Shown: in pieces, positions 22,253-62,262 of the stretch | Position numbering within the stretch: position 1 is the stretch's first letter | Layout: each line of letters opens with the position of its first letter | IMG/VR virus record: IMGVR_UViG_3300032675_000001 | Location: 1-64,000 of that record | Reading direction: 5' to 3' (one strand) | Length of the DNA: 64,000 bases | The notes under the pieces: model-generated | Told to the model about the DNA's origin: nothing | What the model saw: only the letters and a program-made list of their open reading frames with translations | Database searches by the model: none | Translations under genes and position numbers: made by a program

Positions 22253-22366
22253 TTGTTTTTCCTTTTGTTATGCCGGGTTCTAGCCGGTACGCAGTGGGTG
22301 CTGCATAAACTCTCCGCATGAGAGTGTATGAAAGTATTTATACTTTTTGCGTAAAAATGAGGATGG

Positions 22367-22957: not shown

Positions 22958-25027
22958 TTAGTCATAAGTTGCGTTGAGTGTGTACCACTGTCCGCCCGGA
23001 GCAGTTGCATTTGTTGTGCAAATAAAATCAAGTCTTGATCCTGCTGGCTGAGCATATGCTACGTTTGCGGATTGCGAGTTAATAATACCATTACCTAATG
23101 GATACACGTTCAGTATGTTTGCTGAAGTGTTTAAGATTGTAATACGATATCCTGCAACTGCTGTAGGGAGCGACACACCATTTGCTCCAGATGATACCGT
23201 AGATACTACGTTAAAATCATTTGTCAGAGCAGTTGCTGTTCCCTGAGTTGACCCCGCTGCTGAAACCGCTCCCGCCACACTGAATATATGATGCGAAGTT
23301 GCAGATACGTTACCAACAGAAACGTTGCCAGTTACACTCAATGTAGTCAATATGCCAATAGATGTCAAATTAGTGGCAGTGGTCAAGTTCGGTTGTGAGG
23401 AAGTAGTGATTGTTCCAGCAGTTGTAGCTGATCCGGCTGTAGTTGCTGTAGTAGCACTTCCCGCACTTGTTGCATATGTTGCATTTGCCACAGGACCGCT
23501 TACATTAGAACCGGCTACTGAGTTTGCAATTGTTGCATATGCCACAGGACCACTTACATTAGAACCAGCTACTGAGTTTGCAGTTGTTGCATATGTTACT
23601 GGACCACTGACATTAGCGCCCGTAATAGAGCTAAGTGCTGCACCATTACCAAAATGATTACCCGTTATATTAGCACCAGATATATTGCCAGTTGCTATTA
23701 ATATATTGGTGCCTAGATTTCCAACATTTGCATTTCCGGAAATAGTCAACGTGGTTCCGGAATGCAAGTTTCCGTAAATATTACCGTTGGTATCTCTTAC
23801 GACGATGGTATTTGCTGCAATGGTGATTGTTGGGTTATAGCCATCCACCAAGTCAGCATTTAAATTGGCTACCTTTGTAGACGAGTTGACTGTCAATGGA
23901 GCAGTGCCATTTGCAATGTTTGAAGCAAACGAAACGGCAGAAACAACGGCAGTAGAATTTAGATTACCTACGTTTGCGTTCCCATTAACAGTTAGGATAT
24001 TATTAGCAAAATCAAATGTGAAGGTTGACGCTGATCCAAGGATACCGGCATCATTGAACTGCACTTGAGTGTTTGTTCCAGCGGCAACAGTTCCTCCCGA
24101 TCCACCACCAACCAAAGATGTTATTTGTCCACCAGTTTCATAAACACTTGCGGAAAGTCCATTTGCTGTTTGAAGGGCAAGAACTGGACCAGCCGTGCCA
24201 TTAGGATATACATTACTGGAAATCGTAATGGTTGTGCCGGTTGGTATGGAATTAATATAATATGTGGTATTATTGAGAATGCCACTAGTTGACATATTAC
24301 CAACAAACTGAACCGGTTTGTTTACTGAAAGTACGGCACTGTTTCCTACTGTTACAGTATTAACACTAGTTGTAGTATTTGATACAGTAGTATAAGCATA
24401 TGCATTATAAGAAGAAGTGTTTAATGTACTGGAAGATGCCGCAGCGTCAGTATATAGAGCAAAAGTTGTCGGAGTCAATACGTTTGCATAGTATGAATTT
24501 CCATTCAACTGAGTCATTCCTTGAGACCCAGTAATGGTTACCGCTGCACCTTTTGTTAAATTATGATTGGAAGTTGTTGTTACGACACCCGGATTTGCCT
24601 GTGTAACGTTTTCTATGAATGCAAGTAATGTTCCCTTTGGGGTCCATGAAAGATTTCCCAATCCATCAGTTTGCAAAATATAACCAATTGCACCACCACT
24701 GATGCTAACATTTGAAATATTACCAAGATTAATATTTCCACCAGCATTTCCGCCACTATTTACCCAGTTAGTCCCGTCATATGCCAATATTTCTCCTGCC
24801 GCTATAGTGACAGGATTCATGTTTAGATTTCCTATACTTCCATCAATTTGACTGAAGGCAATATTGGAATATGCGGTCAAAACTTCTACGTTTTGGTTTG
24901 GTGATGTCTTACCGATGAACAGACGGTTGTTGTCGGAAGCCCAACCGAACTCACCTTCGTCAAGTTGTGGCAGGTCTACTAGGTTGCCTGATCGTTGCTG
25001 GAGTTTCGAAATCTGTAAAATTGACAT
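22958..25027 (-). CDS. Tail fibre-like protein
   Basis: ISKLQQRSG...LPQLDEGEFGWASDNNRLFIG N-terminal module, GNANVGNL repeats, VANLNADLVDG. Confidence 0.75.
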   Translation of the reverse strand: MSILQISKLQQRSGNLVDLPQLDEGEFGWASDNNRLFIGKTSPNQNVEVLTAYSNIAFSQIDGSIGNLNMNPVTIAAGEILAYDGTNWVNSGGNAGGNINLGNISNVSISGGAIGYILQTDGLGNLSWTPKGTLLAFIENVTQANPGVVTTTSNHNLTKGAAVTITGSQGMTQLNGNSYYANVLTPTTFALYTDAAASSSTLNTSSYNAYAYTTVSNTTTSVNTVTVGNSAVLSVNKPVQFVGNMSTSGILNNTTYYINSIPTGTTITISSNVYPNGTAGPVLALQTANGLSASVYETGGQITSLVGGGSGGTVAAGTNTQVQFNDAGILGSASTFTFDFANNILTVNGNANVGNLNSTAVVSAVSFASNIANGTAPLTVNSSTKVANLNADLVDGYNPTITIAANTIVVRDTNGNIYGNLHSGTTLTISGNANVGNLGTNILIATGNISGANITGNHFGNGAALSSITGANVSGPVTYATTANSVAGSNVSGPVAYATIANSVAGSNVSGPVANATYATSAGSATTATTAGSATTAGTITTSSQPNLTTATNLTSIGILTTLSVTGNVSVGNVSATSHHIFSVAGAVSAAGSTQGTATALTNDFNVVSTVSSGANGVSLPTAVAGYRITILNTSANILNVYPLGNGIINSQSANVAYAQPAGSRLDFICTTNATAPGGQWYTLNATYD
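23488..23617 (-). repeat. 54-nt (18-aa) tandem repeat, about 2.5 copies, GPVxYATxANSVAGSNVS
   Basis: Visible in both the protein and the DNA. Confidence 0.8.
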
Positions 25028-25086
25028 AAGAGTATGTTTCACCCATTTGAATATACTCTTATTTATGCTTTACAGAACGGAAACCT

Positions 25087-28417: not shown

Positions 28418-29563
28418 TTATTTTCCAGCAAGATTTTGTCGTGAGAATCCAAGACGATCAACAAACTTGAGTCCTTGAGCCACAAATCCTTCTTGGGATG
28501 ATCTTCCGTCCGCCAAATGACCACGAACAGGGCTTGATTCTGCTGCTTTGTTAAGCTGATTTACCACGTCCATCTTGAGATTATATAGCGCGGCCCAAAT
28601 CTTGAATGCGCCAATGATACCTTGTTTATGTTGGTTCAGGTGTTGAGCAATCTTAGCTTTCATCGCTGGTGACATTTTTCTGGCTTCCACAAAATCCATG
28701 AAATCACGTGCAAGATTTGTAAGGCTACCAGACACAATCTTTTTGTTAACAAAAACAGTAAACAACTGATTGAATGTTTTGCGTGACTGGGGCGCGGTTG
28801 TCATCAGTTCACGAACAGCCTCACCATATTGTGCCAATGCGTTTTCAGCAGCTTTCTTTAAGGTATTGTTAATCTTTAACTTTGGAGTCATTGGCATTTT
28901 GCTCGGAACAATAGCAACATTTGAAGCATTTTGTAGATTGCCAATAGAACCATCCAATGATACCGCTTGATCAGTTGTTATAGCATCAGCAGGAATGAAC
29001 TGGTGAACGGCAATTGCTGCTTCTTTACCTGCAAGAAGCTTGCCAACTTCGCTATCAGCATCAACTTCGTATGCAATACCATTTGGGTTTGCTTTGAACT
29101 TGTATACTCCACCATGATCTTCTAGTGGGTGGGCAAACAGTAAATCTCCCCAATAATACCCATTTCCAGCACGATCATCTTTTTCAAGCCCTTGCCATAA
29201 GCGGGCGATCACTTCGTGCAAATCACTGCGATCTACCCCACGCTTTGCATCATATTGCGCAAAAGCTTGTGGACTGAATACTTCGCGACCGGTGCCGTCT
29301 TTTTTATTGAACATGTGCTTATCCATGATAGAAAACTTCCCATCAGGTCCGCGTCCAAAAATCAAAGCTGGATATCCATCCCATTTGATGGTGATTGATT
29401 GTGGATTTTCTACCGTAGCAGAAATCGCATCAATAGCCCGTCTTGCACCCTGTTCATCCCCGATGAATACCAAATCCTCTGGATGCTCAAGGTGTCCTTT
29501 ACCTTCAGCAATCACAGTATTGATTGTTTCCATCTTAGTGATTAGGTCACGAATATCGGTCAT
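28418..29563 (-). CDS. Conserved T4-like-phage protein (HLEHPED...KWDG family)
   Basis: HLEHPED, TIKWDGYPALIFG, EGFV...KFVDRLGFSRQN. Confidence 0.65.
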   Translation of the reverse strand: MTDIRDLITKMETINTVIAEGKGHLEHPEDLVFIGDEQGARRAIDAISATVENPQSITIKWDGYPALIFGRGPDGKFSIMDKHMFNKKDGTGREVFSPQAFAQYDAKRGVDRSDLHEVIARLWQGLEKDDRAGNGYYWGDLLFAHPLEDHGGVYKFKANPNGIAYEVDADSEVGKLLAGKEAAIAVHQFIPADAITTDQAVSLDGSIGNLQNASNVAIVPSKMPMTPKLKINNTLKKAAENALAQYGEAVRELMTTAPQSRKTFNQLFTVFVNKKIVSGSLTNLARDFMDFVEARKMSPAMKAKIAQHLNQHKQGIIGAFKIWAALYNLKMDVVNQLNKAAESSPVRGHLADGRSSQEGFVAQGLKFVDRLGFSRQNLAGK

Positions 29564-30813
29564 TTTTTACCTTGAGCTTGAGCTTGAGCCATATATTTTG
29601 CGAATAACTCTGGATTGTTCTTTTTTATTGCATCAAGTTGAGCAAATGTTTCTTTATCCGCAGATGCGTTTGGTGTGGATTGATATCCACCGGCACCAAA
29701 GTTATTGATACCAGATAAGCCTGTCTGGCTTGATCCGCCACTTTGCTTTGAAGATTTAGAAGTTGCTGGACCAGAAATAGCATATGCTGCCTTGGCAAGC
29801 TGCTTTATAGCCGCTTTACCTTTGTCTCTTCCCCAAGAATATTCTATGTTTTGGAGCAATGGAATGACTCTCTGTTTATATTTTTCCCAGTTAGTACCTT
29901 GCATATAACCCTCAAACCAGTCAAGCATATATTGTCCTATAGACATCATTTCTGCTCCATCTTCTTCTCCGGCTTCCATGATGCTTTCAAAGATTGCATT
30001 AAGACGGCGATATTCACTTTCTGATAGCCCTGCTGCCTTCATTGCAAGCTTGTCTGCTGCTGTTCTTTGAAAGCCTGGCTTTGCCGCTGCTGCTTTTCCT
30101 GCTGCCTGAACATTCTGTGCGTTAGCAATGCCCTGTCTATGTTGCTGTGCTGCTGCTACAGTCTGTTGTGCAGATGTTGGTGCTGCCTGTTTTGGAGCCT
30201 GTGCCGGGGCCGCTGGTTGTGCTGCTGGTTGTGCTGCTGGTTGTGCTGCTGGTTGTGCTGCTGGTTGTGCTGCTGGTTTTGCTTGATATCCCAATCCACC
30301 AGAAGTGATTCCCCCAGTTGCAGGGGCTGCTGTAGCTGGCTTAACCGTAGTAGTAACATTGTTAGACTTAAGGGCAGGTGCAGTTAATGGATTAGCCTGC
30401 GGCGCTGGTGGTGTCGCTTTTCTGACATTTGCTGATGTCGGGCTTCCATAGAAGTTTGCTGGCTTCTCATCAGTCGGCTCTGCTTGTGTGGGATTTTCTT
30501 CTGGTTCACCCGATGATGAATTTCCTTCTCCGCCACCTTGTGGCTGCTTGGAATGTGGCGTACCTATTTCAGCATGATAGTCCGGATTAACTATACCACT
30601 TTTCACCGCATTTCTTAAAGAGTTGGATGCATCGTTAATAAAGTCTTTGAAAAACAAATCTTGGGTAAGCTGTTCTTTAGTGCCTTTCCCAGTAAGTGCC
30701 CCTTTAATAGCTGACACTGCATGATCACCAACAAGTGCTCTTGCTGCACCGCCAATAGCATCACCTAGACCTTCGTCTAGTTGTTCTGTTTTCTTGAACT
30801 CATTGATCTTCAT
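29560..30813 (-). CDS. Probable internal head protein with A/P/Q linker
   Basis: MKINEF start, LDEG site, QPAA repeats. Confidence 0.55.
   Translation of the reverse strand: MKINEFKKTEQLDEGLGDAIGGAARALVGDHAVSAIKGALTGKGTKEQLTQDLFFKDFINDASNSLRNAVKSGIVNPDYHAEIGTPHSKQPQGGGEGNSSSGEPEENPTQAEPTDEKPANFYGSPTSANVRKATPPAPQANPLTAPALKSNNVTTTVKPATAAPATGGITSGGLGYQAKPAAQPAAQPAAQPAAQPAAQPAAPAQAPKQAAPTSAQQTVAAAQQHRQGIANAQNVQAAGKAAAAKPGFQRTAADKLAMKAAGLSESEYRRLNAIFESIMEAGEEDGAEMMSIGQYMLDWFEGYMQGTNWEKYKQRVIPLLQNIEYSWGRDKGKAAIKQLAKAAYAISGPATSKSSKQSGGSSQTGLSGINNFGAGGYQSTPNASADKETFAQLDAIKKNNPELFAKYMAQAQAQGKK
30212..30278. repeat. 12-nt tandem repeat GCTGGTTGTGCT, 5 copies plus partial (encodes AQPA)
   Basis: Perfect in-frame copies. 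Confidence 0.9.
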
Positions 30814-32498: not shown

Positions 32499-32562
32499 GT
32501 TTTCTTCTCGCCATCTGAATCTTAATCTTACACTATGTTTGTAGTAAATGCAATAGTATTGG
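32482..32562 (-). pseudogene. Decayed duplicate of the primase 3' end
   Basis: Translates PILLHLLQT*CKIKIQMARRKLDNRA*, versus primase PTLLSILQNATTSKIKIELAKKRILRH. Confidence 0.75.
32525..32553 (-). promoter_or_regulatory. Candidate sigma70 promoter for the helicase, inside the primase remnant
   Basis: TTGCAT-N17-TAAGAT. Confidence 0.55.
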
Positions 32563-32646
32563 GATAAATAAAAGCGTAGTTCACGGTGGTGGAACACCTA
32601 ACTACTCTAATGTCATAGAAGGAAACATCAGCAATGACTATTTATT
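32563..32646 (+). ncRNA. Conserved structured endonuclease leader, copy 1
   Basis: GATAAATA..GTAGTT CAC GGTG gtggaa CACC T AACTAC TCTAA TGTC atagaagg AAACA TCAGCA ATG ACTATTTAT. Confidence 0.8.
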
Positions 32647-33284
32647 CACCTACTGGTCACCGAAAGATATATGAACATCATTTCGGTTCCATCCCCAAAG
32701 ATACAACCGGGCGCTCGTATGAGATACATCACATAGATGGTGATCATTCAAATAATGACCCAACTAACCTAAAATGTGTTACCATTCAAGAACATTATGA
32801 TATCCATTATTCGCAAGGTGATTGGGCCGCATGTCTGTTGATTGCGAACCGAATGAAAGTAACAACGAAGGAAAAATCCGAGTTGAGCACTCAGGCAAAT
32901 ACTAAACGAGTAGCAGACGGTTCACATAACTTCTTAGGAAAAAATAACCCATCACACGATAGAGTAGCAAAAGGTATACATAACTTTCAAGGTGAATCTA
33001 ATCCTGCCAAGCAAAAAGTTAAATCCGGCACATATCACATGCAAGAAAAAAATAATCCATCGAAACTTCGCGTAGATGATGGTACACACAACTTCTTAGG
33101 TGAAAGCAACCCATCACATAAAAGAGTGGCAAACGGCACGCACAACTGGCAACAACCAGTTAATGAAAATCATCCAACTCAGTTTAAATGGAAGTGTCCA
33201 CATTGTGATAAAGAGGGCAAAGGCAAAAGTATGTTTAAACGGTGGCATGGTAACAAATGCGGTTCACTGCTCCAAATGTCGTAA
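32634..33284 (+). CDS. Free-standing HNH homing endonuclease with GxHNF repeats and C-terminal zinc finger
   Basis: YEIHHIDGDHSNNDPTNL...EHYDIH; five 18-aa repeats; CPHC...RWHGNKC. Confidence 0.9.
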   Translation: MTIYSPTGHRKIYEHHFGSIPKDTTGRSYEIHHIDGDHSNNDPTNLKCVTIQEHYDIHYSQGDWAACLLIANRMKVTTKEKSELSTQANTKRVADGSHNFLGKNNPSHDRVAKGIHNFQGESNPAKQKVKSGTYHMQEKNNPSKLRVDDGTHNFLGESNPSHKRVANGTHNWQQPVNENHPTQFKWKCPHCDKEGKGKSMFKRWHGNKCGSLLQMS

Positions 33285-39305: not shown

Positions 39306-39837
39306 TTAATAACTCTATTTCATCATATTTAATGGTTGGAAACTTATCTGAAAGATACATCTTTATCTTGTGATTGTCAACATAAACATTACTCAAAAGT
39401 TCAATGTCGCTATCACTATAAGATGGGTATATTTTTTTAAAATACTCCTTAATATCTTTGGATTTTGGAGACTCGTGCAGTTTACTCACTCGGTCTTTGA
39501 TGTGCGGAATCCACTGGTGGAATTGTTTGCCTATGCCCGGTGCAGCAGCACAAAGCATCAGCCATACCAAATCCGGATGTTTCTGTATATTCTCATTAAA
39601 TAGATACATATTAGCATGATATTCAGTGCTTTGTAAGTAATATGACTGGATATCTTTATTGCCTTTGATGGCGCTCATCCATTGTACCAGCATATAGAAA
39701 CTAATACTTTTTTTCTGGGATTCATTGAGGTTTTTATAATAATTATAATCTTTGCGATCTAGTGCAGCCAATACATCAAACAAGTTGACTGTTTGGTTTT
39801 CTAGTTGGTGTTCTACTGGTAAATTTTTCTTTGACAT
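39250..39837 (-). CDS. Possible clamp-loader small subunit (gp62-like)
   Basis: Size, replication context and weak motif similarity (LVQWMS...N...HPDLVW...FHQWI). Confidence 0.45.
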   Translation of the reverse strand: MSKKNLPVEHQLENQTVNLFDVLAALDRKDYNYYKNLNESQKKSISFYMLVQWMSAIKGNKDIQSYYLQSTEYHANMYLFNENIQKHPDLVWLMLCAAAPGIGKQFHQWIPHIKDRVSKLHESPKSKDIKEYFKKIYPSYSDSDIELLSNVYVDNHKIKMYLSDKFPTIKYDEIELLSELITDQDIKNYEEALGN

Positions 39838-39843
39838 TTTTAT

Positions 39844-39872
39844 ATAATATCACACTGATTGGGTTCTGTCAA
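39844..39872 (-). promoter_or_regulatory. Sigma70 promoter immediately after the GIY-YIG stop codon
   Basis: TTGACA-N17-TATTAT. Confidence 0.75.
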
Positions 39873-40571
39873 CTATTTTGGTTTCTGTTTGCACTTATCA
39901 CCATGATACTTACTGAAGTTTGGCTTGCCTACCATTTTATCACAGTAAATACAAGTTACTCGGATTGTATTTGGGTTCGGGATATTACGAGCAATGCGGG
40001 TAGCTTTTTGTTTTTGTATACTCTCGTCTGTGCGTTTATCGGTCCCGTTCTGTCTTCTAGTATCCCATCGTTTTGCGTTGCTTTCAGGCGTGTTTGGATT
40101 CATAGTTCCGTTACGTTTTCTAGATTCAAGCTGTTTGACAACCCGTTCTGGTGTTTGGGTATTAATGGTTCCATTCTTCCGGCGAGATTTTATTAAACTG
40201 GCAGTATGTTCCGGTGTCCTATCGTATGATCCGTTTTCTTTTCTAATAGTCACTGCCTTTTTGATTGTCTCTTCCGTGTGTTCTATGCCTTCGCCTGATT
40301 CTGGAATTAGATTAGCCCATGTCTTGTGTCCGAATTCGTCCCGTTCATACACTACATTCCATAACTCACTGTAGTATAATCCCCAGTGACGAAGTTCATC
40401 ATTAGTCTGACATTCCTTGAGTATTTCCGTAGTAACATCATATCCGTGTTTTCTAAGGTGCGGTTTCCATAGGTCACCTGACCCTTTGTATTTGTAGGGG
40501 TCTTGCGAGGTTTTTCCAAGGTATTTAAACCCTGTTTTGTTATGGGTCTTCTTATACAAATAAATAGTCAT
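39873..40571 (-). CDS. Free-standing GIY-YIG-like (Seg-like) homing endonuclease with RxxNGT repeats and zinc finger
   Basis: IYLYKKTH..TG.KYLGKT..DPYKYKGSG..W..HL...WANLIPESG; CIYC...YHGDKC. Confidence 0.85.
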   Translation of the reverse strand: MTIYLYKKTHNKTGFKYLGKTSQDPYKYKGSGDLWKPHLRKHGYDVTTEILKECQTNDELRHWGLYYSELWNVVYERDEFGHKTWANLIPESGEGIEHTEETIKKAVTIRKENGSYDRTPEHTASLIKSRRKNGTINTQTPERVVKQLESRKRNGTMNPNTPESNAKRWDTRRQNGTDKRTDESIQKQKATRIARNIPNPNTIRVTCIYCDKMVGKPNFSKYHGDKCKQKPK

Positions 40572-40647
40572 AGCTGATGCTCCTTCTAAGCGTTAGTGTA
40601 GTTGGGAATTGGCGTTCCGTGAGCTACATCAGATATGACTATTTATC
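40560..40647 (-). ncRNA. Conserved structured endonuclease leader, copy 2
   Basis: GATAAATAGTCATATCTGAT GTAGCT CAC GGAA cgccaa TTCC C AACTAC ACTAA CGCT tagaagg AGCA TCAGCT ATG ACTATTTAT. Confidence 0.8.
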
Positions 40648-40689
40648 CCAAACCACATCTTTATTCTATTAAAGGGGTCTCTTTAGCCA

Positions 40690-40971
40690 TTAGATTGCCT
40701 GTGGGTTTTGATAAATCATATTCTTGCCATCATAAGAAATAACAAAGACAGACACATCCATATCACTATTGTACCATTTATTCAAGCATTCATTGTATGC
40801 TTTCTTAATCGCAGCATCAAGATCACAATTTGGAATCGTTAAATCTTCCAGCTTGAATGGCTGTTTGAGGATTTCTGTACCCCCTGCTGTACGTCGAAGA
40901 ACGTGAAAGTAGAAGTTTGGCTTATACCCTACTGGTTCTACATTGATACGAGCGACTTTGATATCACTCAT
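40690..40971 (-). CDS. Hypothetical protein
   Basis: 93 aa, ATGA-coupled. Confidence 0.5.
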   Translation of the reverse strand: MSDIKVARINVEPVGYKPNFYFHVLRRTAGGTEILKQPFKLEDLTIPNCDLDAAIKKAYNECLNKWYNSDMDVSVFVISYDGKNMIYQNPQAI

Positions 40972-41944: not shown

Positions 41945-42781
41945 TTAGTAGTCCAACTTCTTTATTGTAAATGGATACTGTGCTTCCTTATAAAAAGCCT
42001 TACGTTGCGTTAGGTGTCTCTTTGCAAACTTGCAGGTACTTGTTAGGTCCCAAATCTGCACAAAATCCTTGTCTTCCGCTTTTCTTACACCACGCCCAAT
42101 GCTCTGAATAACACGAACAAACGACTTACCAGGTTCAATAAGTACCAAGTTAAAGATACGAGGAATATTGATACCGACAGCCGCAACGCCATACGTGGCG
42201 ACAATAATCTTGTCATCACTCGTGGCCACTTCATCGTATTCTTCCTTTCTTTCTGTTAGTTTAGTGTTTCCGTTGACAAACACCGCGTTGTCCAATCGGC
42301 TCACTAACTCTTTTCCTGCATTCACACGGTCTACTAGGACCAACGTGTTGCCAGTTTTATTGATTTCTTTGATTAGAGAAGCCATCTTATCTAATCGCTT
42401 TTCATCTTCTAAGAGATGTTTGAGTTCAGCCTGATAGTTGGAAAACTCCTTGTTATCTTTCATCTGAATGATGTTTACGTGGCAGTTAGCCAGAACTCCC
42501 TTATCCTGTAGTTCTTTTGCGCCAAGCTTTCCGACAACTGGACCAAGAGATACTAACAGTGATACTTGATCCATCAAATCCTTTGGAATCGTCCCTGTCA
42601 ATCCCCAACGAATAGGTATGTCAGAAAACACTCCTGTTAGCATAGTCTTAAGTACATCGGCCTTTGCCATGTGGCAGTTGGAAACTACTGCTCCATCAAC
42701 TATGTAATTATGATCATTTTCAATATGGAGATTGAACACTTCGTCGGGTTTATCAATTTCAGTTTTTCTTATTAGCTTCAT
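41945..42781 (-). CDS. uvsW: Split intein C-part (35 aa) fused to the C-terminal half of a UvsW-like SF2 helicase
   Basis: VFNLHIENDHNYIVDGAVVSN|CH; GLTGT, GINIP, QSIGRGVR helicase motifs III, V and VI. Confidence 0.92.
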   Translation of the reverse strand: MKLIRKTEIDKPDEVFNLHIENDHNYIVDGAVVSNCHMAKADVLKTMLTGVFSDIPIRWGLTGTIPKDLMDQVSLLVSLGPVVGKLGAKELQDKGVLANCHVNIIQMKDNKEFSNYQAELKHLLEDEKRLDKMASLIKEINKTGNTLVLVDRVNAGKELVSRLDNAVFVNGNTKLTERKEEYDEVATSDDKIIVATYGVAAVGINIPRIFNLVLIEPGKSFVRVIQSIGRGVRKAEDKDFVQIWDLTSTCKFAKRHLTQRKAFYKEAQYPFTIKKLDY

Positions 42782-43673
42782 ATAACTTCCTTATTTTTGT
42801 TGCGGTTTTTTCATCGAATCCGGAGAGGTCAGTGGGACAGCCATTAGTCAATAGCCATTCCTGTGTCACGATAATGACTCTAAAACCATTTTGGTTAGCC
42901 CACTCGTTGAGTGCAACTATTTTTGCGTCAAATATCTCACCTTTACATAACTCCGCCGGTTTCACTTCCGCTACCTGTTTGGTTTCATAGTCAACAAAAT
43001 CAGCTATGTATATTTTTCGATTACCGTTGATAGTGTATTCCAATCTCAACGTTTCATATTCTGCATCCGGATACATATACTGAAACAACGCTTCCCAGCT
43101 TGATCTATATTTCTTTCCGTTAAATTCTGCTGCCCAATGCGTATTTCGATTGTTAGAATTTGGGGTAAAGTCTCCGGCTAATATTTTAGCTTTCATCACA
43201 TCTGACCGGTGTTGTTTATCTTGGTCAGACATTTTTACACCATGCATTCCGTTTGCTTCCCCGCTATTTGCTCGGGAGGCGATGCGGCTATCGGTGTGTT
43301 TAGTCAACCCCTTTGCCCATGAAGTTTGGAGTCCGGTCTTTCCTTTATTCCATGGCACTCCTGTATTTAAATTGCGGCTACTAAGTTCAGGATGTAGTTT
43401 ATGGACTGCTTCACCACCAATTGCGGCAAGCTTGGCCTTTATTTCCCGATCGGTTATCAATCCAGCGAGAAGCAAATCCATGTTCTTCACCCAAAGATCA
43501 GTCTTGATATTCATCACTCTCTTTTTGAACTTGCCAAACTCGGGCTGTATTAATATCTCGCCAGTTGATAATTCTAATGTTGCTTTTCCAAAATCAACTA
43601 CCCTTACCCGTTGGTCATATGTTTCTAGTCGTCCATTTAATCGGACTTTCCATTGTTCATATGTAATTTTCAT
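42759..43673 (-). CDS. Free-standing endonuclease (TnsA-N/PD-(D/E)XK-like with NUMOD3-like motifs) between the split-intein halves
   Basis: PWNKG, GEANGMHG, YRSSWE...YE...YIADF...EVKP; start is likely MKITY at 43673 after SD AGGAG. Confidence 0.8.
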   Translation of the reverse strand: MKITYEQWKVRLNGRLETYDQRVRVVDFGKATLELSTGEILIQPEFGKFKKRVMNIKTDLWVKNMDLLLAGLITDREIKAKLAAIGGEAVHKLHPELSSRNLNTGVPWNKGKTGLQTSWAKGLTKHTDSRIASRANSGEANGMHGVKMSDQDKQHRSDVMKAKILAGDFTPNSNNRNTHWAAEFNGKKYRSSWEALFQYMYPDAEYETLRLEYTINGNRKIYIADFVDYETKQVAEVKPAELCKGEIFDAKIVALNEWANQNGFRVIIVTQEWLLTNGCPTDLSGFDEKTATKIRKLYEANKKN

Positions 43674-43700
43674 AAATACTCCTGCCTTAGCCATATGTAT

Positions 43701-44717
43701 TTATGTTTTGTTTACGATTTCGTGATTTTCAGTAAGTTCGTCTGCCCGACACCATCCTAGGTTTGTTAGAAACTTATGATTTCCGGTAACCCTAATTACA
43801 CTTCCATTATCAAATTCCATTTCATACATTTTTTCAGTGGAAGATATTGTAAGATTCCGGTGTTGTTTTACTACTGTATCTTCCTTAAAGATTCCGGACT
43901 GTTCGCAATAATTGATTATTTTATCTCCAACTTTAACGTCCTTGATTGGTAGATGCCCATTCGGGGTTAGCACTCTGGCTTCTCCATCAAAACATTCGTC
44001 AACCATCACACATACAACGTCTTCAAAAAAGAATTCGTCCATTTCTGGATCAGCATCTTCATCCTTAACCGATTTGAATAGGTTATTTAGAGATTGCCAT
44101 GTGCAAATGGTATGTGTCTTACCGTATTCTTTACGATCACCAAAGTAGACACCCACATCTAGTCCAAGATTGATGTAGTCTGCCTCTGTTTGCACCACCA
44201 GAGACTTGTTAGGGACGATTACAAGCGATCTACCATATCTTTCTATACATTGTGATAGTCCAGCAGTGATAAGCGTCTTACCGGCTCCTGTGGCAACTTC
44301 TTGCAATGCCTGTGGATTAGATAAAAAGGTGTTAATAATCTCAACCTGATAGTCTCGCAATAAGATTGGTTTTCCTTCTGCTGGATGACCCTTTGGCCAT
44401 AGTGTTTCAGCGAAGGTATCTTCTTTGATCAAATCAAATTCTAGGTCTTGACGGCTGCGATGATCTTCCAACTCAATATCATAATCATGATCTATCAAAT
44501 ATGGAATGATCTGATCTAACAGGTTGAGATATGTGCTTCCGGCTAGAGAGAAGTAACTTACTTTTCCGTTCCACCTACCAAGTCTTACGGCAGGTAAAAA
44601 TCTTGCACCTGGTTTTTCGTACTCAAACTTTTTTGTTAATGCTCTTCGGACATCTAGTTCAAGTCCTTCTATTTTTACATTAACTTCATCTTTGATTATT
44701 ATTTTTGCTTCTCTCAT
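43701..44717 (-). CDS. uvsW: N-terminal half of a UvsW-like helicase fused to a split intein N-part (97 aa, 43704-43994)
   Basis: LRDYQ, ATGAGKT, VMVDE|CFDGEARVLTPNG (block A), VTGNHKF (block B). Confidence 0.92.
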   Translation of the reverse strand: MREAKIIIKDEVNVKIEGLELDVRRALTKKFEYEKPGARFLPAVRLGRWNGKVSYFSLAGSTYLNLLDQIIPYLIDHDYDIELEDHRSRQDLEFDLIKEDTFAETLWPKGHPAEGKPILLRDYQVEIINTFLSNPQALQEVATGAGKTLITAGLSQCIERYGRSLVIVPNKSLVVQTEADYINLGLDVGVYFGDRKEYGKTHTICTWQSLNNLFKSVKDEDADPEMDEFFFEDVVCVMVDECFDGEARVLTPNGHLPIKDVKVGDKIINYCEQSGIFKEDTVVKQHRNLTISSTEKMYEMEFDNGSVIRVTGNHKFLTNLGWCRADELTENHEIVNKT

Positions 44718-47721: not shown

Positions 47722-47774
47722 AACTACCCTTCATTGTTTTTATATACAAAAATAATTCATATGTCAAGAAGAGA

Positions 47775-47854
47775 GATAAATAGTCGTGAGTCGCGGAAGC
47801 CCAATTCCCACTCACTCTAATGCTATGAAGGAGCAATCAGCATGACTACTTATT
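47775..47854 (+). ncRNA. Conserved structured endonuclease leader, copy 3
   Basis: GATAAATAGTC GTGAGT CGC GGAA gcccaa TTCC C ACTCAC TCTAA TGCT atgaagg AGCA ATCAGC ATG ACTACTTAT. Confidence 0.8.
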
Positions 47855-48540
47855 CAAAAAACAGAACACCCAGCAAAATTTATCGTAAAATTTACGAAGA
47901 TTACTATGGTCCAATCCCAATAGATGCTGATGGAAAATCCTATGAAATTCATCATATAGACGGCAATCATAAAAATAACGACCCATCTAATTTAATCGCA
48001 GTATCTGCACAAGAACATTATGATATTCATTATTCCCAAGGCGATTGGGGAGCTTGCTGGTTAATGGCAGAAAGACTGAAGTTGTCATCAAAAGAAATAT
48101 CAGAATTGGCACGATTGGCGGCGAATAGAAGAGTAGAAAATGGAACTCACAACTTCCAAGATTCGGAGTCCCAGAGAGAAAAAGCACTGAGAATGGTCCG
48201 TGAAGGGACAAATGTTTTTGTTGGCGGCGAAATTCAACGCCAACACAATAGACGCAGAGTAAATGATGGTTCACACCATTTACTCAAACGTCCCGATGGA
48301 ACAAGTCACTCATCAGATAGAGTTAATGCAGGAACCCATAATTTTCAAGACAGCAAGTCTCAGCAGGAAAGAGCATTGAAAAGGGTTAAAAATAAAACTC
48401 ACAATTTTCAAAAAAGAGAAGGATATGAACATCCTTCAACGTCCGAAAAATGGTATTGCCATACTTGCAAAAAAGAAGGAAAGAATGCGGGAAGTAGAGG
48501 TAGATACCACAAAGGACATGAGGTTACTATAATTAAATAG
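47842..48540 (+). CDS. Free-standing HNH homing endonuclease with GTHNF repeats and zinc finger
   Basis: YEIHHIDGNHKNNDPSNL...EHYDIH; CHTC...RYH. Confidence 0.9.
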   Translation: MTTYSKNRTPSKIYRKIYEDYYGPIPIDADGKSYEIHHIDGNHKNNDPSNLIAVSAQEHYDIHYSQGDWGACWLMAERLKLSSKEISELARLAANRRVENGTHNFQDSESQREKALRMVREGTNVFVGGEIQRQHNRRRVNDGSHHLLKRPDGTSHSSDRVNAGTHNFQDSKSQQERALKRVKNKTHNFQKREGYEHPSTSEKWYCHTCKKEGKNAGSRGRYHKGHEVTIIK

Positions 48541-49768
48541 CATTAAACTTTACGTTGTGGAACCATTTGTCTCGCAGTGCTTCATACTTAGTATTGCGAG
48601 ACAAATTGTTAATAATAACACTATATATTGCATCTTTAACTTGCTCTTTAGTGCCTTCTTTATCCCACAAAGAGAACATAATAGGGCGCGTGAAGCTATC
48701 AAAGTTGGTTGCGTGATTAATTGCAAATTCTTTACGATCACCGATATACTTATCAGATTTATAAAATTGAACATCAGACCAAATTTTATTAACCCTCTGA
48801 TTGATTGCTTTGTTAAAGTCATTTTCAAACACAGTAATTGCATCGCGATCCTCTACGGGTAGATGTGCCTTAACATCATCGATGGTGTTTTCCAATATCA
48901 TTTGCACTACATTGCGATCTTGCAGGATTGCTTCCTTCGCCTTATGAATCTGGAGATACCAATGGCACTTCAACTTCAACATATGCCCATCATCAAAACG
49001 AACCACGAATCCTTCAAGGTCTTCCAGATCACGAACGTATTCAAGGAAAGCCTTCATATCAGTCTGCGGCTCGAATGCACGAACTACAGGAAGATATCCG
49101 CCCTTAAATGTAAATGCATTAACATTACCGACCATAGCATCATGTGTAAGATATCGGCCCGTGTCCATCTGGCGAATAGCAGTCAGAACAAGCTGATCTT
49201 CTTTATAATCAAGAACGATACGTTGCTTACGCGAACACCATTCAAAGATAGGCGTTAGGCCAGCCAGAAGCATTTCAACTGCAAACTCTTCATAAAGAGG
49301 ATTGTTCTTGACGAACTCCTCAACAGGCTTTGCCACATCGGTAGCACCCATCTTCGTGCCCCAGATCATCTGACCATCCACAATGAACGGTGCAATCATG
49401 GAACCATCCAGCTTCTCAAGGATCACATGAGGACGCGACAGATCAATGACATGATCCTGAGTCTCTTCACGCTCGTTCACGTTGAAGAACTTATGGAACG
49501 GACGACGAATGATGTCACCAGTCTTCGAGTCGAAGATGATACCACGACATTCACGGCGAATACGAGCATGAAGATTTTCTATTTCATAATGATCATGATT
49601 ACCACGCAAATCATTAGAAGCAATCACATCAGGAAACGTATCAGCCATCATCACATTGTAAGAAATACAAGTATAAGGACCTTTATCCGCAATAATGAAC
49701 TCGTCCCTGCCTTCGATAGCAGGGAGCACATCAGAAATATTTTTAATAATCGGGAAGGTATAATTCAT
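48533..49768 (-). CDS. rnlA: RNA ligase 1 (T4 Rnl1-like)
   Basis: RECRGIIF, PFHKFFN, EKLDGS motif I, FEW, EGFVV, LKLK. Confidence 0.92.
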   Translation of the reverse strand: MNYTFPIIKNISDVLPAIEGRDEFIIADKGPYTCISYNVMMADTFPDVIASNDLRGNHDHYEIENLHARIRRECRGIIFDSKTGDIIRRPFHKFFNVNEREETQDHVIDLSRPHVILEKLDGSMIAPFIVDGQMIWGTKMGATDVAKPVEEFVKNNPLYEEFAVEMLLAGLTPIFEWCSRKQRIVLDYKEDQLVLTAIRQMDTGRYLTHDAMVGNVNAFTFKGGYLPVVRAFEPQTDMKAFLEYVRDLEDLEGFVVRFDDGHMLKLKCHWYLQIHKAKEAILQDRNVVQMILENTIDDVKAHLPVEDRDAITVFENDFNKAINQRVNKIWSDVQFYKSDKYIGDRKEFAINHATNFDSFTRPIMFSLWDKEGTKEQVKDAIYSVIINNLSRNTKYEALRDKWFHNVKFNAI

Positions 49769-49829
49769 GATGTATCTCCCATTTCACTGTCACTGTTATA
49801 GCACATATAATGATGATGTCAAGCAGAAA

Positions 49830-49911
49830 GATAAATAAAGTTGTAGTTCGCGGAATGGGGATTCCCAACTACTCTAACGCTTAAGAGGAGCAATCAGCAT
49901 GAATATTTATC
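49830..49911 (+). ncRNA. Conserved structured endonuclease leader, copy 4
   Basis: GATAAATAAAGTT GTAGTT CGC GGAAT gggg ATTCC C AACTAC TCTAA CGCT taagagg AGCA ATCAGC ATG AATATTTATC. Confidence 0.8.
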
Positions 49912-50627
49912 ACGCGACAAATGACCGTTCACCTTACACATATTTGATCGGATGGACAAAACATAATATATGGTATTATGGAGTAAGATATGCTAAAGGG
50001 TGTCACCCATCCGAATTCTGGATAAAATACAAAACTTCATCGAATTATGTAGCAGACTTCGTGGCGGTGCATGGTGATCCAGATATTATACAAATAAGAA
50101 AAACATTTACTAATGTTGAATCCGCCAGGCAGTGGGAAACCAAAGTACTCAAAAGATTAAAAGTAATCAAATTAGAGAAATGGCTGAATAAACATGATGG
50201 TAAGGCAGTAGACCCTGCAATCCTATCTATCACAACAGCCCGCATGAATGCGAACATGACTTCGGAAGAAAAAACTCAACGCGGAAAGAAAGGTATGGAT
50301 TCAAGATGGTCTACGGATTCTTCCCTTCGTCCAATAATAGAAATAGTTTGTCCTGTTTGCGGAACACGCATTATCACAAGGGACCCGCATATATCCACGT
50401 GCAGTAAAAAATGTGGATATATTAATAGACCATCACAAAAAAACATACCAAAACTGAAAAACAGTAAAACATATATCATTCAATATCCAGATAATACTGA
50501 ACACATTATTACAGGACTTCGTAAATTCTGCATAGAACATTGTCTCACAGAAAGAATACTATCCAGTACTCTTTCCGGTAAAAGAAACAAACAACATAAG
50601 GGATACAAAATTGTAAAGGCATTATAA
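49899..50627 (+). CDS. Free-standing GIY-YIG-like homing endonuclease with zinc ribbon and NUMOD1-like C-terminus
   Basis: PYTYLIGW...WYYGVRY...YKTSS...WETKVL...WLN; CPVCG...CSKKC; FCIEH...HKGY. Confidence 0.8.
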   Translation: MNIYHATNDRSPYTYLIGWTKHNIWYYGVRYAKGCHPSEFWIKYKTSSNYVADFVAVHGDPDIIQIRKTFTNVESARQWETKVLKRLKVIKLEKWLNKHDGKAVDPAILSITTARMNANMTSEEKTQRGKKGMDSRWSTDSSLRPIIEIVCPVCGTRIITRDPHISTCSKKCGYINRPSQKNIPKLKNSKTYIIQYPDNTEHIITGLRKFCIEHCLTERILSSTLSGKRNKQHKGYKIVKAL

Positions 50628-61593: not shown

Positions 61594-61675
61594 GATAAAT
61601 AAAAGTGTAGTTCGCGGGCGTCCACTCCCCAACTACTCTAATGCTATAAAGGAGCGATCAGCATGTCTATTTATC
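61594..61675 (+). ncRNA. Conserved structured endonuclease leader, copy 5
   Basis: GATAAATAAAAGT GTAGTT CGC GGG cgtccact CCC C AACTAC TCTAA TGCT ataaagg AGCG ATCAGC ATG TCTATTTATC. Confidence 0.8.
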
Positions 61676-62262
61676 GTAAAATATACGAACAGAATTTTGG
61701 ACCTATTCCAAAAGAGCCAAACGGAAGAACTTATGAAATTCACCATATTGATGGCAATCATGATAACAATGACCCTATAAATCTCAAGGCTGTAACAATC
61801 CAAGAACACTATGATATTCATTATTCACAGCAAGATTGGGGAGCTTGTCTATTAATAGGTAAGCGTCTCAATCTTTCTCCTGAAGAAATTTCTAGCATAT
61901 CAAGTAGAAATGCAAAAAAACAAATTGAGAACGGAACGCATCCTTTTCTTAATCCTGAAGTTGGTCGTAAAAGCATTATTAATGGAACGCACAATTTTTT
62001 CGGTGGTAGTATACAAAGTAAAAGCAATCAACGTAGACTAGCAAATGGTTCGCATCATTTATTAAGAGAAAATAGCCCACAAATACAAAATAAAACGCAT
62101 CATTTTTTCGGAGGTGATGTTCAGCGAAATAACAATTTTACGAGATTGGCAAATGGGACTCATCCATCGCAGACTGTTTGGAAATGTGAACATTGCGGCA
62201 AAACTGGACGAGGCAAAACTAATTATAATAGATATCACGGCGATTCGTGTAAAAATATTTAA
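61663..62262 (+). CDS. Free-standing HNH homing endonuclease with GTHxF repeats and zinc finger
   Basis: YEIHHIDGNHDNNDPINL...EHYDIH; CEHC...RYHGDSC. Confidence 0.9.
   Translation: MSIYRKIYEQNFGPIPKEPNGRTYEIHHIDGNHDNNDPINLKAVTIQEHYDIHYSQQDWGACLLIGKRLNLSPEEISSISSRNAKKQIENGTHPFLNPEVGRKSIINGTHNFFGGSIQSKSNQRRLANGSHHLLRENSPQIQNKTHHFFGGDVQRNNNFTRLANGTHPSQTVWKCEHCGKTGRGKTNYNRYHGDSCKNI

What the first reader, a model, noticed from the sequence alone, without database searches (positions are those of the whole stretch)
40560..40647. Each leader is bracketed by an inverted repeat made of the late promoter and the first codons, and it is longest in the only co-oriented cassette
Seen: GATAAATA at the 5' end is complementary to TATTTAT(C) in codons 2-5 of each nuclease (one mismatch in copy 3). 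In the copy at 40571, the only one co-directional with its operon, the repeat extends to 19 of 20 bp (ATAAATAGTCATA-T-CTGATG / CATCAG-C-TATGACTATTTAT) and buries the AUG. Copy 3 has about 12 of 13 bp including a G-U pair; the other antisense-oriented copies have about 8-10 bp. Known: in T4, read-through early mRNA folds over the RBS, while late mRNA starting after the promoter lacks the 5' arm. Inference: this is a timing lock whose strength tracks exposure to read-through. The inner TATTTAT may also act as an opposing late promoter, producing antisense RNA across the leader and feeding the interrupted minus-strand operon.
Basis: partly seen in the sequence, partly recalled or inferred. Interest (0 to 1): 0.7.

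Follow-up and report, generated by a model that had tools for sequence, protein, structure and literature searches.

The report
Two-faced leader of phage homing nucleases
A conserved 90-base control module sits in front of the selfish nuclease genes of a giant freshwater phage. One copy carries a T4-style hairpin that should silence stray early messages, and every copy appears to encode a small antisense RNA against its own ribosome site. Antisense control of this kind is well known for transposons, and I found no report of it for homing nucleases.

Summary
All five leaders in the window are bracketed by (G)ATAAATA and TATTTAT(C), and the copy at 40560-40647 extends this to 19 of 20 bp.

The leader is not private to this window. 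The window is the first 64 kb of a complete 360.7-kb jumbo phage with 13 copies. More than 120 uncultivated lake-phage contigs carry the same module in front of at least three nuclease families.

The inner TATTTA is fixed at the nucleotide level:
- it is kept in three reading frames;
- Ile is ATT in 87 of 87 cases;
- codon 2 is NNT in 93 of 93 cases;
- it keeps a fixed 5-nt distance from CAGC.

As an RNA lock, the bare hexamer pair is negligible (median about 0.5 kcal/mol), and its flanks do not covary. Real locks exist in only a few copies: this one (about 9-10 kcal/mol), one other lineage with compensatory changes, and an unrelated helicase-splitting nuclease at 43671-43705. The link between lock strength and orientation is a trend only (p about 0.05-0.14).

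Read on the antisense strand, the leader pairs at 99.3% of positions against 90.5% on the sense strand (181 G·U cells against 5 A·C cells). It forms an anti-SD hairpin, a second hairpin and a U-rich tail, much like IS10 RNA-OUT.

No transcript data exist, so all start sites are inferred.

The parts
40640..40647 (-). Sense late-promoter box GATAAATA of cassette c2. The predicted +1 is at 40634.
   Evidence: Sequence. The TAAATA-N5-ATG leaderless arrangement at 7 or more genes sets +1 five nt after the box. A late sigma factor is encoded in the complete genome.
40627..40646 (-). 5' arm of the long outer stem (ATAAATAGTCATATCTGATG). It includes GTCATATCTG (40630-40639), which stands where other copies have 3 nt (net +7).
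   Evidence: Homologous cassettes L012, L048, L030 and L069 lack the insertion.
40598..40627 (-). Internal hairpin. In consensus copies it starts exactly at the predicted +1.
   Evidence: Covariation: 97.5% of cells paired, 9 of 11 pairs with double changes, 0 of 500 shuffles as good. In c2 the basal stem has one C.A mismatch.
40580..40586 (-). Shine-Dalgarno sequence GAAGGAG.
   Evidence: Sequence.
40560..40579 (-). 3' arm of the outer stem (CATCAGCTATGACTATTTAT). It covers the SD-AUG spacer, the AUG (40569-40571) and codons 2-4.
40561..40566 (+). Inner hexamer. It reads TAAATA on the plus strand and is the proposed antisense late promoter of c2, with predicted +1 near 40572.
   Evidence: Nucleotide-level conservation in three frames and a fixed N5 distance from CAGC.
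40572..40650 (+). Predicted antisense RNA of c2: an anti-SD hairpin and a second hairpin. The U-rich tail is displaced by the c2 insertion.
   Evidence: Covariance model R2 hit of 72.5 bits. Structure counts.
39873..40571 (-). Homing endonuclease gene of c2 (232 aa). It is GIY-YIG-like, with NUMOD-like repeats and a C-terminal zinc-finger-like motif.
   Evidence: A family representative matches phrog_314 'homing endonuclease' at E 1.9e-7, and Pfam SegE_GIY-YIG only at E 0.028.
39844..39872 (-). Sigma70-like promoter TTGACA-17-TATTAT directly after the c2 stop codon and 6 nt before the next gene's ATG.
   Evidence: It is absent at the empty site in three related genomes, where the two flanking genes overlap as TAATG.
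40690..40971 (-). Orphan 93-aa gene upstream of c2. It is co-oriented and part of the same lineage-specific insertion (39838-40967).
32563..32645 (+). Cassette c1 leader (HNH_3 nuclease at 32634-33284). The antisense RNA is predicted at 32559-32633 (-).
47775..47853 (+). Cassette c3 leader (HNH_3 nuclease at 47842-48540). Its inner box is TACTTA and its outer stem has 12 of 13 pairs.
47739..47767 (-). Outward sigma70-like promoter TTGACA-17-TATAAA, back to back with the c3 late promoter and facing the kinase gene.
49830..49911 (+). Cassette c4 leader (GIY-YIG-like nuclease at 49899-50627). Its inner box reads GATAAATA on the minus strand.
49795..49822 (-). Outward sigma70-like promoter TTGACA-16-TATAAC facing the RNA ligase gene.
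61594..61675 (+). Cassette c5 leader (HNH_3 nuclease at 61663-62262). Its inner box reads GATAAATA on the minus strand.
43671..43705 (-). Independent compact lock. CAUAAAUAC (late promoter) pairs with GUAUUUAUG (start codon) in front of an endonuclease gene that splits a helicase gene.
   Evidence: Fold of -10.4 kcal/mol with z -2.4; the late RNA is unstructured. Gene assignments.

Best explanation
The stretch is the leader of a free-standing homing endonuclease gene. It is one copy of a conserved module of about 90 nt that serves at least three nuclease families in a clade of roughly 350-kb freshwater jumbo phages with T4-like late transcription.

The module is bracketed by two inverted copies of the late-promoter hexamer TAAATA.
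- The left copy is the sense late promoter. Its predicted start is the first G of a covarying hairpin, so late mRNA would begin with a 5'-terminal stem-loop and an open ribosome site.
- The right copy lies inside codons 2-4. It most likely acts as a convergent late promoter for an antisense RNA of about 70 nt. This RNA has a 5' hairpin with the anti-Shine-Dalgarno sequence in its loop, then the complement of the +1 hairpin, then a U-rich tail made from the complement of the sense promoter.
- Such an RNA would pair with the ribosome site of its own leader. Because the leaders are so alike, it could also pair with those of the other 12 copies. This works like IS10 RNA-OUT acting on RNA-IN.

In c2, which is inserted co-directionally into an operon, 10 nt stand where other copies have 3. 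This lengthens the hexamer pair to a 19-of-20-bp stem. Read-through RNA from upstream genes then buries the spacer, the AUG and the first codons, while RNA started at the late promoter lacks the 5' arm. That is a T4 I-TevI / Aeh1 mobE-type timing lock.

Shown here: the sequences, their conservation, the structures and their strand asymmetry, and the energetics. Inferred: both start sites, the existence of the antisense RNA, and every regulatory effect.
For: Module and promoter:
- More than 120 IMG/VR loci carry the leader. Model R1 finds 144 hits and 124 unique leaders.
- There are 13 copies in the complete genome.
- Every downstream ORF tested is a homing endonuclease, falling into 8 N-terminal clusters.
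- TAAATA occurs 45 times in 6.5 kb of intergenic DNA, and it precedes tail-tube and adaptor genes.
- The genome encodes a late sigma factor (phrog_12791, E 3e-74).

Inner box as a DNA signal:
- It is kept in three reading frames at a constant distance from CAGC.
- Codon 2 is NNT in 93 of 93 cases, spread over 11 different codons.
- Ile is ATT in 87 of 87 cases against 40% ATT elsewhere in the same genes (p 5e-35).
- No wobble-compatible variants are seen.
- TATTTA near a start codon occurs in no ordinary gene of the 117-kb fragment: only the nuclease cassettes and the helicase-splitting endonuclease have it.

Antisense RNA:
- The SD segment folds better as antisense RNA in 121 of 121 leaders (-6.4 against -3.0 kcal/mol).
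- An 8-bp helix pairs at every position in 119 of 119 leaders as antisense RNA. As sense RNA one pair is always A.C, and two polymorphic pairs fail in 14 and 68 leaders.
- On the R2 alignment, 99.3% of cells are paired, 14 of 19 pairs show double changes, and 0 of 500 shuffles do as well.
- There are 181 G.U cells against 5 A.C cells.
- RNAalifold predicts both helices on its own.
- Cross-copy duplexes average -60 kcal/mol against -23 for shuffled targets.

The c2 lock:
- Read-through RNA folds at -28.5 kcal/mol against -10.3 for late RNA.
- Its specific opening cost of 8-9 kcal/mol ranks 4th of 119.
- c2 is an insertion relative to three related genomes and sits downstream of co-oriented genes with no terminator detected between them.
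- A second lineage, L057, has a 14-15 bp stem with a T-A to C-G compensation and two kinds of G.U intermediate.
- A separate co-oriented nuclease in the window has a 9-bp promoter-to-AUG lock.

Precedents: the T4 locks (PMC2988022) and IS10 (PMC5006887).
Against: - No RNA data exist. No RNA-seq run was listed, so neither start site has been observed.
- A bare TAAATA is only mildly avoided inside genes, so the hexamer alone may not be enough for promoter activity.
- The simple terminator scan does not flag the antisense hairpin, whose stem is bulged and AU-rich at its base.
- Alignments A3 and A6 were fitted to the models, and the leaders are related by descent. Counts of cells are therefore not independent events.
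- The strand asymmetry could partly reflect selection to keep the sense ribosome site unpaired.
- Co-oriented copies c8, c9 and c12 lack a lock.
- The c2 stem could be a neutral product of a template-switch mutation. It is identical in the lake samples examined, so there is no population variation to test.
Confidence: 0.5

Rival explanations
1. The promoter / first-codon repeat is an RNA timing lock in every cassette, and selection tunes its length to how much sense read-through each cassette receives.
For: - The outer stem appears in the minimum-energy fold of all five read-through RNAs.
- Real 5' extensions raise the ribosome-site opening cost more than shuffled ones do (7.9 against 6.8 kcal/mol, p 2.5e-5).
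- Co-oriented cassettes score higher: mean 1.75 against 0.73 overall, p 0.05 within c2's family, and the top 3 of 13 in the genome are co-oriented.
- The L057 lineage shows compensatory changes.
Against: - The median specific effect is about 0.5 kcal/mol.
- Extension beyond the hexamers is barely above a swapped-partner null, 1.54 against 1.24.
- There is no covariation at the four flanking positions, p 0.3-0.9.
- TATTTA is at least as conserved in anti-oriented cassettes (96%) as in co-oriented ones (89%).
- c8, c9 and c12 are co-oriented but have no extension.
- Overall orientation tests give p 0.076-0.14.
- The model does not explain the antisense-only helix.
Confidence: 0.2
2. The long c2 stem has no function. 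One template-switch (quasi-palindrome) mutation copied the start region in inverted form next to the promoter, and the result has simply persisted.
For: - The 5' arm is a near-perfect inverted copy of c2's own start region and arises from a single insertion.
- Close homologues lack it.
- There is no sequence variation in the stem across lake samples, so purifying selection cannot be shown.
- c2's leader is otherwise somewhat degenerate, with a lower model score and a broken basal pair.
Against: - Long stems built from the late promoter and the start region recur independently in co-oriented nucleases: the L057 lineage with compensatory and wobble changes and the helicase-splitting endonuclease.
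- The energetic effect is large and falls exactly on the initiation region.
- The design matches tested T4 and Aeh1 cases.
Confidence: 0.2
3. TATTTA is conserved for reasons of protein or translation (the GIY motif, codon bias, or an AU-rich enhancer after the AUG). The inverted repeat with the promoter is then incidental.
For: - In the GIY-YIG-like families, residues 3-4 (I-Y) look like the catalytic GIY motif.
- The genome is AT-rich, and ATT and TAT are common codons.
- The box is unpaired in predicted late RNA.
Against: - The hexamer is kept in three reading frames that encode M-x-I-Y, M-I/L-F and M-Y-L.
- Codon 2 varies freely in its first two bases but is always NNT.
- ATT is used in 87 of 87 cases against 40% elsewhere.
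- HNH families carry the box as an N-terminal add-on before their domain starts.
- Its distance is fixed to CAGC, not to the AUG.
Confidence: 0.05
4. No antisense RNA is made. The antisense-only pairing is a by-product of selection for an unpaired sense ribosome site, and the inner hexamer serves as a DNA site for another factor.
For: - No transcripts have been observed.
- TAAATA alone is not strongly avoided in coding DNA.
- The terminator-like end is weak by simple criteria.
Against: - Selection for an open sense strand does not predict that all 8 pairs stay complementary.
- Both polymorphic sites change only in the wobble-compatible direction.
- Watson-Crick double changes occur at four pairs.
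- The helix starts one nt after the start site predicted from the inner box.
Confidence: 0.2

Closest known systems
T4-type translational timing locks (I-TevI, I-TevII, I-TevIII, segB, Aeh1 mobE; also T4 e, soc, 49)
   Same: A late promoter lies inside the 5' arm of a hairpin whose 3' arm covers the initiation region of a nuclease gene embedded in an earlier transcription unit. Late RNA starts inside the stem and is translatable (PMC2988022). c2, the L057 lineage and the 43671-43705 hairpin fit this design.
   Different: In c2 the stem closes a loop of about 47 nt that holds another conserved hairpin, and the SD itself is enclosed rather than paired. Most copies of the module have only a 6-8 bp A.U version with negligible predicted effect. 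None has been tested.
IS10/Tn10 RNA-IN / RNA-OUT antisense control (multicopy inhibition); also IS200 art200
   Same: Convergent promoters face each other across the 5' end of a gene for a selfish DNA enzyme. A stem-loop antisense RNA of about 70 nt is complementary to the translation initiation region. It could act in trans on many near-identical copies (PMC5006887; PMC4513863).
   Different: Here both promoters would be phage late promoters. The genes are homing endonucleases of several unrelated families sharing one leader. The anti-SD sits in a hairpin loop. The RNA and its effect are predicted only. There is no sequence homology to IS10.
Hairpin-plus-late-promoter 5' regions of metagenomic gene-splitting endonucleases (Dassa et al. 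2009)
   Same: They found hairpins upstream of 15 of 16 environmental free-standing endonuclease genes, including Lake Gatun samples. Ten included TATAAATA, and two conserved motifs complemented each other on the stem (PMC2677866). This may be the same or a related leader.
   Different: That paper's sequences and motif logos are not held as text, so identity could not be checked. It reads the hairpin as an mobE-like translational attenuator and does not mention an inner inverted promoter box or an antisense RNA.
PeSL promoter-terminator cassettes of T4-like phages, and promoters embedded in T4 seg/mob genes
   Same: Small conserved stem-loop plus promoter units sit at the borders of variable genes. 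Invading nuclease cassettes bring promoters for the downstream host gene (PMC4122927; PMC2988022). Here sigma70-like outward promoters abut 24 of 80 anti-oriented cassettes and follow c2.
   Different: PeSLs pair a terminator with an early promoter and are not tied to nucleases. This module is built on late promoters and carries an SD and a start codon.

Membership tests
T4-type late-promoter / initiation-region hairpin lock | A T4-like late promoter lies immediately upstream of the gene. | tested here: met
   GATAAATA lies at 40640-40647. TAAATA is enriched upstream of structural genes, and a gp55-like sigma factor is encoded. Promoter activity itself was not measured.
T4-type late-promoter / initiation-region hairpin lock | The promoter lies in the 5' arm, so RNA started there lacks that arm. 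| tested here: met
   The predicted +1 (40634) falls inside the 5' arm. The late RNA folds at -10.3 kcal/mol against -28.5 for read-through RNA. The +1 is inferred from the TAAATA-N5-ATG rule.
T4-type late-promoter / initiation-region hairpin lock | The 3' arm sequesters the SD and/or the start codon. | tested here: met
   In c2 the AUG, the spacer and codons 2-4 are paired. Opening costs 16-17 kcal/mol against 6.3. This is not met in most other copies, where the median gain is about 0.5 kcal/mol.
T4-type late-promoter / initiation-region hairpin lock | The gene lies co-oriented inside an earlier polycistronic unit. | tested here: inconclusive
   c2 is co-oriented, inserted into an operon relative to three related genomes, and has no terminator detected upstream. 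The timing class of the operon is unknown.
T4-type late-promoter / initiation-region hairpin lock | Translation is confined to late infection. | not testable with these tools
   There is no cultured host and no RNA or protein data.
IS10 RNA-OUT-like cis-antisense control | A promoter inside the 5' end of the gene faces the sense promoter. | tested here: inconclusive
   The inverted TAAATA is invariant, frame-independent and at a fixed N5 distance from the helix start. No transcription start data exist.
IS10 RNA-OUT-like cis-antisense control | A short, stably folded antisense RNA with a defined 3' end. | tested here: inconclusive
   Two helices are supported by covariation and by G.U strand asymmetry. 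A U-rich tail is present, but the simple terminator scan does not call it.
IS10 RNA-OUT-like cis-antisense control | Complementarity to the translation initiation region, with action in trans on other copies. | tested here: inconclusive
   Complementarity holds by construction. Cross-copy duplexes average -60 kcal/mol against -23 for shuffled targets. Inhibition was not tested.
Rfam families | A match to a curated covariance model. | tested here: not met
   No family matches the leader at the gathering score or at E up to 10.
GIY-YIG homing endonucleases (c2 protein) | A profile match to the GIY-YIG catalytic domain. | tested here: inconclusive
   Pfam finds nothing for c2. A family representative gives SegE_GIY-YIG at E 0.028, below the cutoff, and phrog_314 'homing endonuclease' at E 1.9e-7. 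The N-terminal IY...YLG spacing looks right by eye.

The most novel reading that the evidence does not exclude
Homing endonucleases of several unrelated families in one giant phage share a single sense/antisense control module. Every copy would make a small late antisense RNA that masks the ribosome site of all copies. This amounts to copy-number-dependent 'multicopy inhibition' of selfish nucleases, analogous to IS10 but built from convergent T4-type late promoters. The need for cross-pairing would explain why the leader is far more conserved than the genes it serves.
Probability: 0.35. Interest if true: 0.8.

Novelty: new variant of a known kind. Interest (0 to 1): 0.6.

Why it matters
Homing endonucleases must be kept on a tight leash by the phages that carry them. 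The known leashes are T4's hairpin locks, autorepression and promoter choice.

This module shows the T4 lock principle in a distant, uncultivated jumbo-phage clade. It also points to a further layer, a shared antisense RNA, which I found no report of for homing endonucleases in the papers searched here.

If real, the antisense RNA would explain three things: the extreme conservation of a mobile leader across nuclease families, the frame-independent hexamer inside the coding region, and how a genome tolerates 13 such genes.

The module is also a compact, portable late-expression and silencing unit, and a clean candidate for a new RNA family. More than 120 instances are available, with covariation and an unusually clear strand signal.

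Tried and rejected
- GenBank phages hold no relative of the region or of the leader: megablast found none and sensitive blastn found none. No cultured model or published transcriptome is therefore available.
- Rfam gave no family for the leader.
- No RNA-seq run was listed. Laying DNA contigs from four lake runs showed only that assemblies break at the repeated leader and that the c2 stem is identical where it is spanned.
- A sense-strand helix enclosing the SD (AUGCU/AGCAU) was considered and rejected. It is broken by A.C in most leaders and pairs only on the antisense strand.
- Covariation at the positions flanking the hexamers was looked for and not found.
- Genome-wide avoidance of TAAATA inside genes is only mild, so it does not decide whether the hexamer alone is a promoter.
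- The simple terminator scan did not call the antisense hairpin.
- T4 gp55 found nothing in the 117-kb fragment, but it did in the complete genome.
- The idea that the orphan gene upstream of c2 is a regular partner of co-oriented cassettes was rejected. It has no homologue in any fetched locus.
- The supplementary motifs of Dassa et al. 2009 are not held, so identity with their hairpin could not be checked.
Full report
WHAT IS THERE

The finding's coordinates (40560-40647, minus strand) span the region from GATAAATA (40647-40640) to the end of ATG ACT ATT TAT (40571-40560) of a 232-aa ORF at 39873-40571.

Four more copies of the same leader of about 70 nt lie on the plus strand, with start codons at 32634, 47842, 49899 and 61663. 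Three of the five ORFs are HNH_3 nucleases. Two are GIY-YIG-like with no Pfam hit.

It is 19 of 20 bp in c2, 12 of 13 bp (one G.U pair, one A.C mismatch) in c3, and 8-10 bp in the others. RNAfold places this outer stem in the best fold of all five read-through RNAs.

CONTEXT

The window is identical, coordinate for coordinate, to the first 64 kb of a complete 360,683-bp virus record with terminal repeats. That genome carries 13 leader copies.

It encodes a late sigma factor (phrog_12791, E 3e-74) with weak similarity to T4 gp55. TAAATA is concentrated in intergenic DNA, 45 occurrences in 6.5 kb, in front of tail-tube, adaptor and other genes.

At least seven genes have TAAATA-N5-ATG. This suggests leaderless late mRNAs and places +1 five nt after the box, as in T4 (my own knowledge for T4).

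A covariance model built only from the hairpin-to-ATG part found 144 hits and 124 unique leaders. The large contigs share the late sigma at 65-81% identity, so this is one clade of lake jumbo phages.

Neither GenBank phages nor Rfam contain the leader. Every downstream ORF tested is a homing endonuclease, in eight N-terminal clusters covering GIY-YIG-like, HNH_3 and a phrog_655 HNH type.

THE INNER HEXAMER IS A NUCLEOTIDE-LEVEL SIGNAL

- TA[TC]TTA lies next to the start codon in 121 of 124 leaders, and 114 have exact TATTTA.
- It occurs in three reading frames (M-x-I-Y, M-I/L-F, M-Y-L) while keeping its distance from CAGC, which is 5 nt in 98 of 121 leaders.
- In the main frame, codon 2 uses 11 different codons, but all 93 end in T.
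- Ile is ATT in 87 of 87 cases against 40% elsewhere in the same genes (p 5e-35).
- Among the 132 genes of the 117-kb fragment, TATTTA this close to a start occurs only in four of the five cassettes of the window and in one other nuclease (c3 has TACTTA).

This rules out a purely protein or codon-bias explanation.

IS IT AN RNA LOCK?

I compared the cost of opening the ribosome site (-13 to +13) in three RNAs: read-through RNA, the predicted late RNA, and read-through RNA with a shuffled 5' extension.
- The means are 7.9, 5.55 and 6.8 kcal/mol. The real extension adds a median of only about 0.5 kcal/mol.
- Extension of the stem beyond the hexamers is barely above a swapped-partner null.
- The four flanking positions show no covariation.

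Strong locks are rare:
- An orthologous lineage (L057 and 11 relatives) has a 14-15 bp stem in which both arms are coding. It shows a T-A to C-G compensation and two different G.U intermediates, and its upstream gene ends inside the promoter.
- c2 has a specific gain of 8-9 kcal/mol and ranks 4th of 119.
- A few weaker cases exist.

Orientation:
- 80 cassettes are anti-oriented to their upstream neighbour and 36 are co-oriented.
- Co-oriented cassettes score higher: mean 1.75 against 0.73, Mann-Whitney p 0.14.
- Locks of 5 kcal/mol or more occur in 5 of 36 co-oriented against 3 of 78 anti-oriented cassettes, p 0.064.
- A test stratified by nuclease family gives p 0.076, and p 0.05 within c2's own family.
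- Within the complete genome the three strongest of 13 are co-oriented, but c8, c9 and c12 are co-oriented with no lock.

WHY THE c2 LOCK IS STILL CREDIBLE

- c2 and an orphan 93-aa gene (39838-40967) are absent from the orthologous site of three related genomes, where the flanking genes overlap as TAATG.
- c2 lies downstream of co-oriented genes with no terminator detected between them.
- The insert ends in a strong sigma70-like promoter, TTGACA-17-TATTAT, 6 nt before the next ATG.
- The same window holds an unrelated co-oriented endonuclease (42759-43694) that splits a helicase gene. In front of it, CAUAAAUAC (late promoter) pairs with GUAUUUAUG (start codon) in a 9-bp hairpin of -10.4 kcal/mol (z -2.4), and the late RNA is unstructured.
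- This is the I-TevI / Aeh1 mobE design reviewed in PMC2988022.
- A neutral template-switch origin for the c2 stem cannot be excluded. The stem is invariant in the lake samples that span it.

THE ANTISENSE STRAND

- The segment between the hairpin and the start codon folds better as antisense RNA in 121 of 121 leaders (-6.4 against -3.0 kcal/mol).
- The fold is an 8-bp helix, 5'-CUGAU.GCU [loop CCUUUAU, the anti-SD] AGC.RUUAG-3'.
- Every pair is a standard pair in 119 of 119 leaders when read as antisense RNA. When read as sense RNA, one pair is A.C in all 119, and two polymorphic pairs fail in 14 and 68 leaders.
- A second model built on the antisense strand gave 119 hits. On that alignment 99.3% of cells are paired, 14 of 19 pairs show double changes, and 0 of 500 shuffles do as well.
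- There are 181 G.U cells against 5 A.C cells, so pairing is 99.3% as antisense RNA against 90.5% as sense RNA.
- RNAalifold predicts both helices without being given the structure.
- Fifteen of the G.U cells in the second hairpin correspond to the 'unpaired' cells seen earlier on the sense-fitted alignment.
- Applying the N5 rule to the inner hexamer puts the antisense +1 on the G opposite the last C of CAGC, one nt before this helix. That explains the frame-independent spacing.
- After the second hairpin comes ACUUUUAUUUAU, the complement of the A-rich spacer and the sense promoter. The spacer is A-rich here, whereas a C often directly follows the box at other late promoters of the genome (by eye).
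- The predicted product is an RNA of about 70 nt with the layout of IS10 RNA-OUT (PMC5006887).
- Antisense RNA from any of the 13 copies could pair with any leader: mean -60 kcal/mol against -23 for shuffled targets.

Caveats: the alignments were fitted to the models, the leaders are related by descent, the simple terminator scan does not call the hairpin, and no transcript has been observed.

FEEDING THE INTERRUPTED OPERON

Sigma70-like promoters facing away from the nuclease abut the leader in 24 of 80 anti-oriented cassettes. The figure is 2 of 36 for co-oriented cassettes (p 0.002) and 1 of 80 for a sense-strand control. The -35 box lies mostly 9-11 nt beyond the late-promoter box. c3 and c4 are examples (TTGACA-17-TATAAA and TTGACA-16-TATAAC).

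These promoters, rather than the inner hexamer, are the likelier way the neighbouring genes are kept expressed. This matches the embedded promoters of T4 seg and mob genes and resembles the terminator-promoter PeSL units.

PRIOR WORK AND VERDICT

Dassa et al. 2009 reported hairpins with TATAAATA and two mutually complementary motifs upstream of metagenomic endonuclease genes. This may be the same leader, but their motifs are not available to me.

- The c2 lock is a new member of a known kind.
- The shared module, with an inverted promoter box and a strand-specific antisense fold, is a new variant.
- Its proposed antisense control is unproven.

My confidence in the combined explanation is 0.5. 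Taken separately, I put the c2 lock at about 0.6 and the antisense RNA at about 0.45-0.5.

Noticed in passing
window 41945-44717 (-): A DNA helicase gene is split in two by an intervening endonuclease gene. The N-half is at 43701-44717, the C-half at 41945-42781, and the endonuclease (phrog_15427) at 42759-43694. The endonuclease has its own late-promoter / start-codon hairpin. This is a 'fractured gene' arrangement like Aeh1 nrdA-mobE. I did not check for split inteins.
   Followed up: partly
window 22250-22325 (-): An Rfam freshwater-2 RNA motif (RF02980, 61 bits against a gathering score of 49.9) lies in the 5' leader of the 470-aa gene at 20840-22252, just downstream of a TAAATA box at about 22335.
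   Followed up: no
window 4656, 27887, 43698, 57577 (minus strand), more outside the window, and 39837-39872: Many genes have TAAATA followed by exactly 5 nt and then the ATG. One gene has a sigma70-like -10 box 6 nt before its ATG. This suggests widespread leaderless mRNAs in this phage.
   Followed up: partly
L121 2863-3040 (-), which is G001 about 90,140-90,300: A sixth cassette outside the window is a decayed copy. The leader and TATTTA are intact, but the GIY-YIG-like ORF stops after 30 codons. A late promoter with a leaderless ATG for the next gene follows.
   Followed up: partly
window 48561-48610: A 21-bp inverted repeat (86% complementary, 8-nt loop) lies 20 nt past the c3 stop codon, inside the 3' end of the convergent RNA ligase gene. 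It may be a terminator for the nuclease transcript.
   Followed up: no
window 30158-30292 and 23470-23631; also 6-98 against 23604-23696: There are 12-nt tandem repeats (GCTGCTGGTTGT) inside the gene at 29560-30813. There are 54-nt tandem repeats inside the 694-aa gene at 22958-25042. A 93-nt segment is shared at 83% identity with the gene at the window's start. These look like repeat-rich fibre-like proteins.
   Followed up: no
G000/G001 about 91,790-91,812 (outside the window): A perfect 20-nt palindrome, TAAATATCATATGATATTTA, has TAAATA-N4-ATG on both strands. It looks like a relic of an M-I-F-I type nuclease start fused to its own inverted copy.
   Followed up: no
L127 and L137 (IMG/VR relatives of the L057 lineage): The nuclease start codon is ATA instead of ATG, while the long promoter / first-codon stem is intact. 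These are possibly decaying nucleases that keep their leaders.
   Followed up: no
window 40531-40614, in lake metagenome runs X1, X3, X17 and X19: Summed contig depth over the leader and the first codons is 5-10 times that of the flanks, and assemblies break there. The module is therefore abundant across many genomes in these lakes.
   Followed up: no
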